Positions 3,513 through 44,306 of a stretch of 64,000 bases of DNA are shown here, one piece after another. Each line of letters begins with the position of its first letter. Position 1 is the stretch's first letter. Under the pieces are notes generated by a model. That model did no database searches, was not told the origin of the DNA, and saw only the letters and a program-made list of their open reading frames with translations. The position numbers and the translations under genes are program-made. The stretch covers positions 1,610,326-1,674,325 of the forward strand of contig BCKQ01000002.1 of NCBI GenBank assembly GCA_001600695.1. Reading direction: 5' to 3'. The stretch is from Ascoidea asiatica JCM 7603. Taxonomy: Eukaryota; Fungi; Ascomycota.

Positions 3513-4019
3513 TAATACACACTCAAATTATTATCATTATGAATATATTAATATATTAATATAATAATATAATATAATATAATATAATATAAGATATATA
3601 TACAAAATAAGTTTTTTTTTTGTATTTTTTGTATTTTTTGTTCGTTTTTGTTAGTCTTTTTTTTCATCTATATTCTTGCATTAATAATTTTTTATTTATT
3701 AACGTTTTATCTTTTAATTTACATGTATATTACTTAATTATTCTTCCAAAGCTAATAACCATTACAATTTCAATTATTTTTTATCCTTTTTCTTCTCTTT
3801 TTAATACACTTTTGAAAAATAACAATGATAATAATGATCGTGTCACGTGCGAGTCCATTTCCATGGGTCTTCTTTTTTTAAATTCTTTGATTTTAATTTT
3901 CATTGGCTGAGTTCAATGAAAACGAATAAAAGAAAAGAAAAGAAATGAAAAGAAATGAAATGAAATGAAAAGAAGTTGATTGAAGTTGATTGAAAGAGAT
4001 ATATTTATTGAATATAATA

Positions 4020-40391: not shown

Positions 40392-43300
40392 ATGTCACGA
40401 AATTCAAGAAATTATTCTAAAAAGCTTGCTATCGCCGAATTCAATGATTTTTTTTCTAATTCAAGACTTCCAAGTCAATTTGAAAATAATATAATGTTAC
40501 GGGGTGTTCAAAAAGCATCTGACTGGTTATATTATGTTGGAAAAATTAGTGGAGATAAAAATGAGATTTTATTTGAAAGATCTGTTGTAGATAGAGATGT
40601 CTTACAAAGAGAAGCAAATTATGCATCATATGATTCTGAAGAATACGAATCAAATAATGTACATTCTCATATTAACAATGAGAATATACAAAATGATAAT
40701 ATTGACAATGAAAATCCCATTGAGAAAAAATCGCCTGATAATGATACTCCAATACTCTCTAACAAATTGAATGACAGTAATAATGAGAATCTAAGCGATT
40801 ATGATTACGATTTTGTTCAGGATAATGGAAATGATATGAATTACGTAGATGAAAGTGAAATTAATCAGGAAGAAAAACAGGTAGAAGAAATAGAAAAAGA
40901 AAAAGAAAAAGAAGTTGAAGATTATAATGAAGACAAAAATGAAAATTTTGAAAATAATTTAAGTCTTACCGATATTGGAATTTCAAATCTCACTTCTCCT
41001 AACAAAGCTTTCAAAAATAAAAATTTAAACGACGATTTGAATTCTATTTCACCACAAACTCCTTTCAATAGCGTTAAAAAATTACAATCTCCTTTTGAAT
41101 TATCACCTTCTTTGAAATCAAAAAGTAAACCTAAAGATAACTTAAAAAACAATAAACCATTTGGTGATAAAGATTTATCATATTTAAAACAAAATATTTG
41201 GATTATTGAAAATACATTCCATGAAACTGTACCATTATCCTCTAGTTTTAATTCTTGTATATGTTTTTCTAATTGTTCAGATGCATGTCTTAATAAAATG
41301 TTAAAAACAGAATGTACAACTAAAATTTGTCCATTTCAAGGTAAAAATTGTGGTAATACCCCATTTCAGGATTTGTACCTGATCATAAATAACAATTCGA
41401 TTACAAAAAAAGAGATACCTTCTCTTTTAGGATATGAAATTACTCCAATAAATATGAAGGGCTTTGGTTTAATAGCTACTAAAAAGTTTCAACCATATAG
41501 TTTTATTATTGAATATACTGGAGAAATTACTAATACCAAGCATTTGAAAAACAAAAATTTAAATTCATTTAATTTTCTAAACCTAGATTCAGATAATAAT
41601 TATTTTTTAGATATAAGTAAGAAAAGCTCACATGCTAGATTTATTAATCATTCTTGTGATTCTAATTCAGTCATTGAAAGATGGTTAGTTAATAGTGAAC
41701 CCAAAATAGGGTTATTTGCGGGACCTAAGGGGATTAAACAAGGGGAAGAAATAACTTGCAACTATGGATCCAGTTTTTTTATTCAAAAGGAACTGGATGA
41801 AAAAAAAAAAAAAAATGCTGATCATGCTTCAAAGATAAAATGTTATTGCAATTCAAAATATTGCTTAGGCTATATACCGGCATTGAATATTAACAGCAGT
41901 AATTACACAAAAGAAGAATCTAAAAAAATTAATCTGGATAAAGTCAAGCCTAGAAGTAATAATAATAAACCAATTTCTCAAAAAAGTCCTAAGTTAGAAT
42001 CAAAGAAGGAAATTCAAAAAAAAAATGCTTCTGACGATATACCTGTTCCAATTAGCAAACGTGCTACACGAAGATCTCAAAAAACTGCTGAGCTATCTGA
42101 CCTTGGATTGTATATGAACCCTAAAACACTCAGAAATTTGGCTATAGATATGGCTCCACCTGGAAAATGGGATCATACTTCGGATGAATTAGTTGAATTG
42201 AATAAAAATGCTCAACTTTCAACTGCAAGATATAATCCTGAACTACGAGGAAAAAATACCAAGTACAAAGATCAAGTAATCGAACTCAACTTAATTCGAC
42301 CTTCTAAAGATATTGAAGAATTAGAATCCGGCAACGAAAGAATGGAATCTGAAAAACAAGAGGACCTTTCTCCCCAGACCGATCATGATTCAAGTTCTCA
42401 AGATAAACTTCAATTGAAAGAATCTTCAGGAAAAATAAAAATGAAAAGAAAGAGAATATATAAAGAAAAGCTGCTTCATGATCCAGCATTTGATTCAGAT
42501 AATCTGATAGAACCTTCAGGGGAAATAAATTTGAAAAAAAAGGCAAAAAAAAAAGAAAATATAACGCATGATGATTCAGACTTTGATTCTGATACACCAA
42601 TAATGAACATTCGTAGGAAATCCAGATCAATCTCCAAAATTGCTATTAGTGAAAAATCTAAAAAAGAAGAAGTAAAAGCTAAACAGAAACCCGAAACAGT
42701 TTTTCTGAAAAGATCAAAAAAAGAAGTAAATAAAATCAGAGCTAAAAAGGAGATGCAAAAATTTCAGGAGTCGCTTAAATTGGATCTATCCAAAATTAAA
42801 AAGCACAAACGTGTAGATAGCAGTAAAACAACGACTCCCATTGAAAAGCCTAAAGAATTGAAAAAGACAAGAACCTTATTAGATTTTATTAATGAAGAAA
42901 AAGCTGCTAAAATTAAAGAATTGAAACAGAAAGCTAGGCTGAAGGCAAAAACTGGTGATCGTATCAATGTTTTTCAATCGACTTCATCTGACGAGGAAGA
43001 GAAAGTGAAAAGCAAAAACCTACCAGATGTGAATGCTTCAAATAGTTCTATTACTCCGATTATAGTACAATCTCCTATTACTCCAGTTATAACCCAACCT
43101 CCTACTAATTTCGTCAACCCTTATTCAAACCAGGATGATAGTTATCTTCAAACATATTATCCCGAATACTTACAAGAAAGTACTTTAAAACCTGAACCTC
43201 AATACAATCCTTATGACTATACTCCTAGCTATAATAATTATGATTCGAACTATGATGGAGGAAATAATTATTCTGCACTGAAAGCACCTGAGAGAGGTAG

Positions 43301-44306
43301 CTCACGAGGCAGCGATTATCGAAGTAATAATAAAACTAGAATTCAGCCGAGAGGTAATTTTGATGCAGTTGATAATAGGAACAGTGGAAGATATTCTAAT
43401 AGCAACAAGTTCGATTATTCAAGAGAAAATAAAAAATATGATACATTTCAAAAGCCTAAAGATTCGAAAAGAAATTCAAATTCATATGACCCAAGAAGTA
43501 AAAGTAGAGGTAGAGATGATAGCTATGATAGTAATAACTTCTCGGCAAAAAATGAATATGATAAAAAAAGCAGTTACATGAGCAGGAACTCTAATGGCAA
43601 AAAATGGGAAAATGGAAGTAAAAATGGATATGACCGAAAAAATAGCAATGAGAGAAAAGAAGGCTACGATAAAAATTATGGAAAAAACAAGGCTGAAAAT
43701 TATAAGCGAAAGGATGATTTCAACAAATCAACCTTTTATGATAAACATAGTGATTATCGTAAAAGCAATGGATACCATAAAGAAAATTCTCGTGATAGGA
43801 AAAATGGGTATGATTCAAAATCTACTTATAAGAAGAGCGACAGTTTCGAAAATAAAAAAAGTGATTACAGAGATTATGAAAATAAGAATTATGATAAAAA
43901 AAGCTCAACTTCCAATTATGAGACTAATCAAGGATATAATAATAGAACAAACTACGATCATTATGATGATAATTATGAAAAATATAATAATAAAGACAAC
44001 TACAATAATTATGATAACTACGACAATTATGATAATAATGAAAATATTTCTATTAAAGTGAATAATAATAAAGGTACTGAGATCCAAGAAAATAAGGAGG
44101 CAGCTGATTTTGTTCAGGGAATTTCGAGTCTTATAAATGAAAATTCAGAAAAGGAAGTTACTAAAAGTTTTAAAACAGTTTCTGAAAAAACTCACTTGGA
44201 AAAAGCAAAGTTTCCAACAGGGCCGCGGGTAGAAAGTAATTCAGCAACTTATGATAACTTTGATAGCTACGATAATTATGATAATTATGATAACTATCAG
44301 AATTGA
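40392..44306 (+). CDS. AWS-SET-postSET histone lysine methyltransferase, ASH1-like (H3K36 class), with a long low-complexity C-terminus
   Basis: AWS: CIC..CSDACLNKMLKTEC..ICP..CGN.PFQ. SET: KGFGL, FQPYSFIIEYTGEI, ARFINHSC, IGLFAGPKGIKQGEEITCNY. Post-SET: CYCNSKYCLGYI. No WW or SRI domain seen. Confidence 0.85.
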   Translation: MSRNSRNYSKKLAIAEFNDFFSNSRLPSQFENNIMLRGVQKASDWLYYVGKISGDKNEILFERSVVDRDVLQREANYASYDSEEYESNNVHSHINNENIQNDNIDNENPIEKKSPDNDTPILSNKLNDSNNENLSDYDYDFVQDNGNDMNYVDESEINQEEKQVEEIEKEKEKEVEDYNEDKNENFENNLSLTDIGISNLTSPNKAFKNKNLNDDLNSISPQTPFNSVKKLQSPFELSPSLKSKSKPKDNLKNNKPFGDKDLSYLKQNIWIIENTFHETVPLSSSFNSCICFSNCSDACLNKMLKTECTTKICPFQGKNCGNTPFQDLYLIINNNSITKKEIPSLLGYEITPINMKGFGLIATKKFQPYSFIIEYTGEITNTKHLKNKNLNSFNFLNLDSDNNYFLDISKKSSHARFINHSCDSNSVIERWLVNSEPKIGLFAGPKGIKQGEEITCNYGSSFFIQKELDEKKKKNADHASKIKCYCNSKYCLGYIPALNINSSNYTKEESKKINLDKVKPRSNNNKPISQKSPKLESKKEIQKKNASDDIPVPISKRATRRSQKTAELSDLGLYMNPKTLRNLAIDMAPPGKWDHTSDELVELNKNAQLSTARYNPELRGKNTKYKDQVIELNLIRPSKDIEELESGNERMESEKQEDLSPQTDHDSSSQDKLQLKESSGKIKMKRKRIYKEKLLHDPAFDSDNLIEPSGEINLKKKAKKKENITHDDSDFDSDTPIMNIRRKSRSISKIAISEKSKKEEVKAKQKPETVFLKRSKKEVNKIRAKKEMQKFQESLKLDLSKIKKHKRVDSSKTTTPIEKPKELKKTRTLLDFINEEKAAKIKELKQKARLKAKTGDRINVFQSTSSDEEEKVKSKNLPDVNASNSSITPIIVQSPITPVITQPPTNFVNPYSNQDDSYLQTYYPEYLQESTLKPEPQYNPYDYTPSYNNYDSNYDGGNNYSALKAPERGSSRGSDYRSNNKTRIQPRGNFDAVDNRNSGRYSNSNKFDYSRENKKYDTFQKPKDSKRNSNSYDPRSKSRGRDDSYDSNNFSAKNEYDKKSSYMSRNSNGKKWENGSKNGYDRKNSNERKEGYDKNYGKNKAENYKRKDDFNKSTFYDKHSDYRKSNGYHKENSRDRKNGYDSKSTYKKSDSFENKKSDYRDYENKNYDKKSSTSNYETNQGYNNRTNYDHYDDNYEKYNNKDNYNNYDNYDNYDNNENISIKVNNNKGTEIQENKEAADFVQGISSLINENSEKEVTKSFKTVSEKTHLEKAKFPTGPRVESNSATYDNFDSYDNYDNYDNYQN

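What the first reader, a model, noticed from the sequence alone, without database searches (positions are those of the whole stretch)
40392..44306. ASH1-like (not Set2-like) H3K36 methyltransferase in a budding yeast: possible retained or repurposed gene-silencing system
Seen: an AWS-SET-postSET module at about 41250-41880 within a 1304-aa protein. It has a long insert between AWS and the GxGL motif, 'FQPYSFIIEYTGEI' and 'LFAGPKGIKQGEE', with no WW or SRI domain. Known: filamentous-ascomycete ASH1 has F.P..I.EYTGEI and LFAGxxGIxxGEE, whereas Set2 has GIFAxRxIxxGEE plus WW/SRI. Neurospora and Fusarium ASH1 marks poorly transcribed genes and is linked to PRC2/H3K27me. S. cerevisiae has only Set2 for H3K36 and no PRC2. 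Inference: this yeast keeps a divergent ASH1, implying a Pol II-independent H3K36 silencing pathway, possibly without canonical Polycomb. The NHSCxPN motif is NHSCDSN and ELTYDY is EITCNY, so activity or product specificity may have changed.
Basis: partly seen in the sequence, partly recalled or inferred. Interest (0 to 1): 0.8.

Follow-up and report, generated by a model that had tools for sequence, protein, structure and literature searches.

The report
ASH1-type histone methyltransferase in yeast
This budding yeast has, besides the usual Set2, a second and very divergent H3K36-type histone methyltransferase of the ASH1 family, which textbooks and surveys say yeasts lack; relatives turn up in many non-model budding yeasts, so it is a real but not unique gene.

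Summary
Window 40392-44306 (+) is an intact 1304-aa ORF with AWS, SET and post-SET and no WW or SRI.

The genome has a separate canonical Set2 (AWS-SET-SRI, contig C15). No EZH2-type CXC, SUZ12 VEFS-box or KMT1 Pre-SET was detected.

- **Phylogeny:** two mixture-model trees put the protein in a fungal ASH1 clade (99/97 and 100/96). That clade holds the characterised Neurospora ASH1 and is sister to animal ASH1L. It is apart from yeast Set2.
- **Family-level test:** joining the yeast ASH1-like family to Set2 is rejected (p-AU 0.0017).
- **Caveat:** this protein is a very long branch, and AU tests on it alone are not decisive (p 0.14 and 0.20).
- **Independent support:** an N-terminal motif profile built from other fungi hits only this ORF's N-terminus in the whole genome (E 8e-9).

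Orthologues exist in Komagataella, Kuraishia, Pachysolen, Wickerhamomyces, Cyberlindnera, Yarrowia, Blastobotrys, Nadsonia, Tortispora and Pneumocystis. Published surveys state that yeasts lack ASH1.

This copy is unusual. It has Cys at the F/Y switch, a degenerate FxLP motif (the MRG15/Eaf3-binding site), and a 13-residue insert in the autoinhibitory-loop region. The genome also has KMT5 and Eaf3.

A silencing function is inference only; no RNA data were available.

The parts
40392..44306 (+). Whole ORF, 1304 aa: ASH1-family lysine methyltransferase
   Evidence: identical in three DNA runs
40395..40541 (+). N-terminal family motif (SR..K......DFF.NS.LP...), residues 2-50. It is shared with yeast and Pneumocystis ASH1-like proteins.
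   Evidence: A profile built from 11 other fungi (A3) gives a single hit in the 20.3-Mb genome, at G000:C2:1650720-1650866, E 7.7e-9.
41094..41108 (+). FELSP (residues 235-239): degenerate remnant of the FxLP MRG15/Eaf3-binding motif, at the family's usual distance before the AWS flank
   Evidence: motif function from PMC5963871
41256..41369 (+). AWS zinc cluster (C289, C291, C295, C299, C308, C313, C320; Pfam AWS 295-326)
41370..41459 (+). AWS-SET linker, lengthened relative to Set2 and to other ASH1
41460..41768 (+). SET domain (residues 357-459): G357-F-G359, E374-Y375-T-G377-E, N419-H420-S-C422, the F/Y-switch position C456 and the catalytic Y458
   Evidence: AF2 model pLDDT 81
41769..41840 (+). 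Loop between the SET core and post-SET (residues 460-483) with a 13-residue Lys-rich insert. It contains the A16 tract at 41800-41815 and corresponds to the autoinhibitory-loop region of ASH1L. Model confidence is low here.
41841..41882 (+). Post-SET (C484, C486, C491)
41979..44303 (+). About 775-aa low-complexity K/S/N/D/E/Y-rich tail with no detectable similarity to orthologues

Best explanation
The gene encodes the budding-yeast orthologue of ASH1 (fungal Ash1/KMT2H, Neurospora NCU01932, animal ASH1L). This is the second member of the AWS-SET-postSET H3K36 methyltransferase family. Shown: it coexists with a canonical Set2 that carries the SRI domain. It has no SRI or WW domain itself. It keeps the SAM-binding and catalytic residues and all zinc ligands. 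Inferred: it methylates H3K36 on nucleosomes independently of elongating RNA polymerase II. As in Neurospora, Fusarium and Zymoseptoria, it would do so over poorly transcribed genes, where Eaf3/Rpd3S-type readers could turn the mark into repression. In this genome that would happen without PRC2 or H3K9 methylation, and possibly downstream of the KMT5 (H4K20) enzyme the genome also retains. This copy evolves fast. Cys at the F/Y switch predicts an altered methylation state. The degenerate FxLP motif and the lengthened loop before post-SET predict altered or lost activation by Eaf3.
For: - Domains: Pfam finds AWS and SET only.
- Own genome: SRI occurs only in the C15 Set2 gene, and AWS only in Set2 and this gene. 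The C15 Set2 domain is 60-70% identical to Set2 of all yeasts.
- Nearest relatives: exhaustive phmmer gives 36-42% identity and 110-135 bits to AWS-SET proteins of Komagataella, Wickerhamomyces, Cyberlindnera (auto-named ash1), Kuraishia and Pachysolen. Pezizomycotina ASH1 come next. Yeast Set2 score only 49-75 bits.
- Tree 1 (LG+C20 PMSF): ASH1 clade 99/91, fungal ASH1 99/97, yeast clade 96/87 with this protein nested at 99/87.
- Tree 2: includes Neurospora ASH1, P0376, whose Y886/Y888 match the paper. Fungal ASH1 including this protein 100/96; with animal ASH1L 98/81; yeast Set2 100/100.
- AU test: yeast ASH1-like family plus yeast Set2 as one clade is rejected (dlnL 52.3, p 0.0017).
- Profile scores of this domain: yeast-ASH1 HMM 198.9 bits, Pezizomycotina-ASH1 HMM 136.0, yeast-Set2 HMM 88.5.
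- Evidence outside the catalytic domain: the N-terminal motif profile from other fungi hits only this ORF's start in the whole genome, E 7.7e-9.
- Conserved residues: all 18 invariant columns of a 54-sequence alignment are kept.
- Structure: the AF2 model has pLDDT 81 and matches the H3K36 KMT fold.
- Partners: KMT5 and an Eaf3 MRG domain are present.
- Function of ASH1 in filamentous fungi: PMC6251624 and PMC10553808.
Against: - This protein is the longest branch in both trees (2.07 and 3.41 substitutions per site) and has deviant composition.
- AU tests on it alone are not decisive. Held with Set2: dlnL 16.0, p 0.143. Forced outside the ASH1 clade: dlnL 8.2, p 0.197.
- FastTree misplaced it.
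- It differs from the consensus at 10 of 47 highly conserved columns, the most of 54 sequences.
- There is no canonical FxLP.
- Cys replaces the Tyr of the F/Y switch.
- PDB sequence and fold searches cannot separate ASH1L from NSD or SETD2.
- No RNA run exists, so expression is unshown.
- Activity, substrate and any repressive role are untested.
- The absence of PRC2 rests on Pfam scans whose controls could not ring.
Confidence: 0.7

Rival explanations
1. It is an ASH1 orthologue by descent but has been repurposed. Fast evolution, Cys at the F/Y switch, loss of FxLP and the long insert before post-SET would mean it no longer acts as an Eaf3-activated H3K36me1/2 enzyme. It might have another product state, a non-histone or other-lysine substrate, or mainly a scaffolding role through its 775-aa tail.
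For: 10 of 47 conserved columns are changed, including Y396L, G412S, P424S, D457N and G487N. FELSP stands in place of FxLP. C456 sits at the switch. There is a 13-residue insert in the loop that autoinhibits ASH1L. The branch is very long.
Against: All invariant SAM-binding, catalytic and zinc residues are kept. The domain folds confidently. Much of the drift runs towards N, K and S, as expected in a genome of 25-30% GC. The Komagataella orthologue also lacks FxLP.
Confidence: 0.2
2. It is a divergent Set2 paralogue that arose by duplication within budding yeasts, lost SRI, and only resembles ASH1 through long-branch attraction.
For: The AU test does not reject this protein alone joined to yeast Set2 (p 0.143). 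The PDB search is a near tie between ASH1L, NSD2 and SETD2.
Against: The family-level AU test rejects it (p 0.0017). Bootstrap support is 99-100 for the fungal ASH1 clade. The domain scores 110 bits more on the yeast-ASH1 HMM than on the Set2 HMM. The family shares the FxLP module with animal ASH1L and Pezizomycotina ASH1. The N-terminal motif links this ORF to that family. The 'FAG' one-residue insertion is shared with Pezizomycotina ASH1 and absent from Set2.
Confidence: 0.04
3. It is a decaying gene or an assembly artefact around the A16 tract.
For: An A16 homopolymer lies inside the coding region, and the sequence is highly divergent.
Against: A 3.9-kb open frame in DNA of 29% GC has a chance probability of about 7e-53. 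The sequence is identical in contigs from two studies. The catalytic residues are conserved.
Confidence: 0.02

Closest known systems
Neurospora crassa ASH1 (NCU01932; P0376) and the Ash1 of Fusarium, Magnaporthe, Zymoseptoria and Aspergillus
   Same: AWS-SET-postSET as the only recognisable domains. No SRI. Same fungal ASH1 clade (100/96). 'FAG' insertion and EYTGE(I/V) motif. Coexists with Set2, KMT5 and Eaf3.
   Different: The SET module lies in the N-terminal third rather than the C-terminal half. Cys replaces Tyr886 at the F/Y switch. FxLP (RDFKLPF in Neurospora) has degenerated to FELSP. There is a 13-residue insert before post-SET. No PRC2 (SET-7/EZH2, SUZ12) was detected in the genome. 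About 25-30% identity.
Budding-yeast ASH1-like proteins (Komagataella pastoris ANZ73739, Wickerhamomyces ciferrii CCH42258, Cyberlindnera fabianii ONH64699 'ash1', Kuraishia, Pachysolen, Yarrowia YALI0D21684p, Blastobotrys, Nadsonia, Tortispora)
   Same: Best sequence matches (36-42% identity). Same clade. Shared N-terminal motif.
   Different: This copy is the most divergent. It has extra low-complexity inserts of about 110 aa between the N-terminal motif and AWS, C456, and no FxLP. Most orthologues carry two FxLP-type motifs; Komagataella also lacks them.
Animal ASH1L / Drosophila Ash1 (AMC complex with MRG15 and Caf1)
   Same: Catalytic module, and sister clade to fungal ASH1 (98/81). Best PDB sequence hit is ASH1L, 2e-17. 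At family level, an FxLP motif lies about 40 aa before AWS.
   Different: No bromodomain, PHD, BAH or AT hooks. This copy has no intact FxLP.
Set2/SETD2
   Same: AWS-SET-postSET fold and the H3K36 KMT superfamily.
   Different: No SRI or WW, and a different clade. The genome has its own Set2 (L015:2575-5589, 1005 aa, sister to Ascoidea Set2 at 98/98).

Membership tests
ASH1 family (KMT2H; fungal Ash1, animal ASH1L) | AWS-SET-postSET catalytic module with intact SAM-binding and catalytic residues and zinc ligands | tested here: met
   Pfam AWS and SET. All 18 invariant columns kept. AF2 pLDDT 81 and H3K36-KMT fold.
ASH1 family (KMT2H; fungal Ash1, animal ASH1L) | No SRI or WW (not tethered to the RNA polymerase II CTD), with a separate Set2 present | tested here: met
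   No SRI or WW down to E=1. The only SRI in the genome is in the C15 Set2 gene.
ASH1 family (KMT2H; fungal Ash1, animal ASH1L) | Falls in the clade holding characterised ASH1 (Neurospora ASH1, animal ASH1L), apart from Set2 | tested here: met
   Support 99/97 and 100/96. Family-level AU test against Set2, p 0.0017. HMM scores 199 / 136 / 88 bits. Caveat: AU tests on this long branch alone give p 0.143 and 0.197. The independent N-terminal motif supports orthology.
ASH1 family (KMT2H; fungal Ash1, animal ASH1L) | FxLP motif about 40 aa N-terminal of AWS that binds the MRG domain of MRG15/Eaf3 | tested here: not met
   No F.LP anywhere in the protein. FELSP lies at the equivalent place. The motif is present in crab ASH1L, Pezizomycotina, Pneumocystis and most yeast orthologues.
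ASH1 family (KMT2H; fungal Ash1, animal ASH1L) | Tyr at the F/Y switch (mono/di-methylase type; Y886 in Neurospora) | tested here: not met
   C456 in ITCNY. Orthologues have Y and Set2 has F.
ASH1 family (KMT2H; fungal Ash1, animal ASH1L) | H3K36 methylation of poorly transcribed chromatin in vivo | not testable with these tools
   No RNA or ChIP data; no RNA runs found.
Set2/SETD2 | SRI domain and placement in the Set2 clade | tested here: not met
PRC2-linked facultative heterochromatin (as in Neurospora and Fusarium) | EZH2/SET-7 (CXC + SET) and SUZ12 (VEFS-box) encoded in the genome | tested here: not met
   No VEFS-box and no preSET_CXC match. The 11 SET loci are Set1, Set2, ASH1, KMT5, Set3/4-like and split-SET types. 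The tool warns that its controls could not ring, and EED was not tested.

The most novel reading that the evidence does not exclude
Many budding yeasts outside Saccharomycetales and Serinales would retain a Polycomb-free, H3K9me-free repressive chromatin pathway built from KMT5 (H4K20me), Eaf3 and ASH1 (H3K36me). In this species the enzyme would have become independent of Eaf3 activation (FxLP lost, autoinhibitory loop remodelled), with a changed methylation state (Cys at the F/Y switch). That would make it a natural constitutively active variant of ASH1.
Probability: 0.2. Interest if true: 0.75.

Novelty: new member of a known kind. Interest (0 to 1): 0.5.

Why it matters
H3K36 methylation independent of RNA polymerase II has been studied in animals, where it is redundant and essential, and in filamentous fungi, where it is entangled with PRC2. 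The field treats yeasts as having only Set2. [quoted passage not shown] In this genome it sits with KMT5 and Eaf3 but without detectable PRC2 or H3K9 methyltransferase. That offers a simple unicellular setting to ask what ASH1-type H3K36me does on its own. This copy's Cys switch and lost FxLP are natural variants of two residues or motifs that control ASH1L product state and activation.

Tried and rejected
- FastTree on 190 rows placed the protein with two long metagenomic branches (P0062, P0154) outside the yeast clade. Two careful mixture-model trees did not reproduce this, so I treat it as long-branch attraction.
- PDB sequence search and Foldseek cannot separate ASH1L, NSD and SETD2. I used them only to confirm the fold.
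- AU tests on the single protein were inconclusive. I replaced them with a family-level test and the extra-domain motif search.
- phmmer with the C-terminal 775 aa found nothing in the relatives.
- Literature searches for ASH1 with Komagataella, and for YALI0D21684, found nothing.
- The look-up of sequencing runs found no RNA run, so expression could not be checked.
- The word-index search with the single protein found only Pezizomycotina hits and missed the yeast orthologues. The exhaustive search was needed.
- Animal NSD and plant ASHH references could not be fetched by name and are missing from the trees.
- I searched the KMT5 gene by its second exon only, by reference (L017:4050-4850).
Full report
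**1. Observation**

Window 40392-44306 (+) is one uninterrupted ORF of 1304 codons ending in TGA. The ORF is 29% G+C. Composition alone gives a chance of about 7e-53 that 1304 codons stay open.

Pfam finds AWS (residues 295-326) and SET (357-459) and nothing else down to E=1, so there is no WW and no SRI. A post-SET CxCx4C lies at 484-491. The catalytic module spans nt 41256-41882.

Contigs of three DNA runs from two studies carry the same sequence with no difference or gap, including the A16 tract at 41800-41815. These runs may be the assembly's own source. No RNA run was found. The ORF has eight CTG codons, none at an invariant position, so an alternative CUG reading would not change the conclusions.

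**2. The genome's set of SET genes**

The window is G000:C2:1610326-1674325 of a 20.3-Mb assembly. Earlier notes of this scan call it a budding yeast. A six-frame Pfam SET scan finds 11 loci. With Pfam on their ORFs, these are:
- Set1 (N-SET, SET_assoc, RRM) on C8.
- A canonical Set2 on C15 (L015:2575-5589, 1005 aa, AWS-SET-SRI).
- The present gene.
- A PHD-containing Set3/4-like gene.
- Several split-SET genes.
- A gene on C4 whose second exon matches SUV420H2/KMT5B at E 2.6e-32, i.e. a KMT5/Set9 homologue. I searched it by exon 2 only, by reference, and did not join the exons.

SRI occurs only in the C15 gene. AWS occurs only in Set2 and in the present gene. The C15 catalytic domain is 60-70% identical to Set2 of all budding yeasts and closest to Ascoidea rubescens.

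No VEFS-box (SUZ12), preSET_CXC (EZH2) or Pre-SET (KMT1) match was found. The tool warns that its control genomes cannot ring for these families. EED was not tested. An Eaf3-type MRG domain is present on C3.

**3. Relatives**

The word-index search found only Pezizomycotina AWS-SET proteins. An exhaustive phmmer of residues 250-540 against 1.84 billion representatives gave 4737 hits. The best (36-42% identity, 110-135 bits) turned out to be budding-yeast proteins:
- Komagataella pastoris.
- Wickerhamomyces ciferrii.
- Cyberlindnera fabianii, auto-named 'Histone-lysine N-methyltransferase ash1'.
- Kuraishia capsulata.
- Pachysolen tannophilus.
- Nadsonia fulvescens.
- Tortispora caseinolytica.

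Pneumocystis carinii, Pyronema, Orbilia and a crab ASH1L also appear among the hits.

A profile of the yeast family added Yarrowia (YALI0D21684p), Blastobotrys and Trichomonascus. The next-best hits were Pezizomycotina proteins named Ash1 and a Neurospora crassa protein, P0376. The P0376 motif LTY886-D-Y888 matches the F/Y-switch and catalytic residues reported for Neurospora ASH1.

No Saccharomycetaceae or Candida/Serinales protein was among the best 120, although these groups are the most heavily sequenced. Kuraishia and Wickerhamomyces also have their own Set2, so the two-gene state is shared.

**4. Phylogeny and other tests of orthology**

Locally, the domain scores 49-75 bits against 120 yeast Set2 and 56 bits against its own Set2. 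It scores 83-100 bits against Pezizomycotina ASH1 and 110-135 bits against yeast ASH1-like proteins.

A careful IQ-TREE under LG+C20+F+G4 (PMSF) with 76 rows and 266 columns gave the following:
- An ASH1 clade (99/91) made of animal ASH1L plus fungal ASH1 (99/97).
- Within fungal ASH1, a Pezizomycotina clade (100/98) and a yeast clade (96/87).
- This protein nested in the yeast clade (99/87).
- Yeast Set2 as a separate clade (100/99).

A second tree with 59 rows added Neurospora ASH1, an Aspergillus Ash1 and Yarrowia:
- Fungal ASH1 including this protein: 100/96.
- With animal ASH1L: 98/81.
- Yeast clade plus this protein: 92/75.

Holding the yeast ASH1-like family together with yeast Set2 is rejected (dlnL 52.3, p-AU 0.0017).

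The caveat is that this protein is the longest branch (2.07 and 3.41) and has deviant composition. FastTree misplaced it. AU tests on this protein alone do not reject joining it to Set2 (p 0.143). Nor do they reject forcing it outside the ASH1 clade (p 0.197).

Three further lines of evidence address this:
- **Profile scores.** HMMs built without this protein score its domain at 198.9 bits (yeast ASH1), 136.0 (Pezizomycotina ASH1) and 88.5 (yeast Set2). Its own Set2 scores 199, 169 and 450 on the same three models.
- **A shared insertion.** The one-residue 'FAG' insertion is shared with Pezizomycotina and several yeast ASH1 and is absent from Set2.
- **An independent region.** A 58-position profile of an N-terminal motif (consensus R.SR...K......DFF.NS.IP..DD..L..AVE.C.EWKRY) was built from 11 other fungi. 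In the whole 20.3-Mb genome, in six frames, it hits one place only: C2:1650720-1650866, which is window 40395-40541, the start of this ORF (E 7.7e-9).

I therefore take orthology to the fungal ASH1 family as well supported.

**5. What is unusual in this copy**

All 18 invariant columns of a 54-sequence alignment are kept. These are the AWS cysteines, G357, E374-Y375-G377, H420, C422, N425 and the catalytic Y458. However, 10 of 47 highly conserved columns differ, the most of any sequence.

- **F/Y switch.** The position that is Tyr in ASH1 and Phe in Set2 is Cys456 here.
- **Loop insert.** A 13-residue Lys-rich insert, partly encoded by the A16 tract, lies between the SET core and post-SET. In ASH1L this region is the autoinhibitory loop. 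The AF2 model (pLDDT 81, pTM 0.79) has low confidence there and high confidence in the core and post-SET.
- **FxLP motif.** In Drosophila and human Ash1, this motif lies about 40 residues before AWS, binds MRG15 and stimulates activity (PMC5963871). It is conserved as (R)DFKLP(W/F) in crab ASH1L, Pezizomycotina, Pneumocystis and most yeast orthologues, and many fungi carry a second F.LP 17 residues upstream. This protein has no F.LP at all and shows FELSP at the equivalent position. Komagataella has also lost the motif.
- **C-terminal tail.** The 775-aa tail is low-complexity and matches nothing.

**6. Mechanism**

*Shown.* This is a second H3K36-family enzyme that lacks the Pol II-binding domain. 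It sits beside a normal Set2 in a genome that also encodes KMT5 and Eaf3, with no detectable PRC2 or KMT1.

*Known from the literature.*
- In Neurospora, ASH1 deposits H3K36me2 over silent or poorly transcribed genes and is needed for their repression (PMC6251624).
- In Zymoseptoria, Kmt5 and Eaf3 are needed for Ash1-dependent H3K36me3 and for silencing (PMC10553808).

*Inferred.* The yeast enzyme marks poorly transcribed chromatin independently of Pol II, and the mark is read by Eaf3/Rpd3S-type complexes. This copy may have an altered product state (C456) and altered or lost Eaf3 activation.

**7. Novelty**

The family and its function are known, and the yeast orthologues are already in public databases, one of them auto-named ash1. 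Yet two surveys state that Saccharomycotina have a single SET2 and no ASH1-like gene (PMC2474616, PMC9692433). The Neurospora paper excepts yeasts. A 2025 survey of 1038 fungal genomes reports Ash1 absent from 36.8% of species without discussing yeasts in its text. I found no paper on the yeast genes.

I class this as a new, divergent member of a known kind. Its broader value is as a pointer to Polycomb-free ASH1 biology in tractable yeasts.

Noticed in passing
G000:C4, locus L017:3894-7238 (+); exon 1 about 3894-3966, intron GTATGT...TACTAAT...AAG, exon 2 from 4050: A KMT5/Set9 (SUV420H-type H4K20 methyltransferase) homologue with one intron. Exon 2 matches SUV420H2 at E 2.6e-32. S. cerevisiae lacks this enzyme, and in Zymoseptoria Kmt5 is required for Ash1-dependent H3K36me3. 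I searched exon 2 only and did not join the exons.
   Followed up: partly
window 40395-40541; relatives P0010:27-84, P0012:16-73, P0050:12-69 and others (alignment A3): An undescribed conserved N-terminal motif (R.SR...K......DFF.NS.IP..DD..L..AVE.C.EWKRY) in ASH1-like proteins of budding yeasts and Pneumocystis. It has no Pfam match, and a simple pattern search did not find it in Pezizomycotina ASH1. Its function is unknown.
   Followed up: partly
relatives, about 15-35 residues before the AWS flank (e.g. P0012:132-153, P0020:343-364, P0050:117-138): Fungal ASH1 proteins often carry two FxLP-type motifs 17 residues apart (F.F.LP..G.GL..LN....DFKLPW), whereas animals have one. This could be a bipartite Eaf3/MRG-binding module.
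   Followed up: no
window 41800-41815: The A16 homopolymer inside the coding region encodes part of the Lys-rich loop insert. It has the same length in contigs from two studies. It is a potential slippage site that would truncate the protein before post-SET.
   Followed up: partly
P0050 (Pneumocystis carinii, 356 aa): Pneumocystis (Taphrinomycotina) has a short ASH1-like protein with both the N-terminal motif and DFKLPW, although the surveys read here list no Ash1-family protein for S. pombe.
   Followed up: no
L015:2575-5589 (G000:C15): This yeast's Set2 (1005 aa) shows AWS, SET and SRI but no WW domain in Pfam, like the Ascoidea and Saccharomycopsis Set2 hits. Most other yeast Set2 proteins have WW or the PF18507 domain.
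   Followed up: no
P0062, P0154, P0100 (metagenomic or unnamed): A small clade of AWS-SET proteins that attracted the query in FastTree but groups near P0152 outside ASH1 in the careful trees. Its identity is unknown.
   Followed up: no
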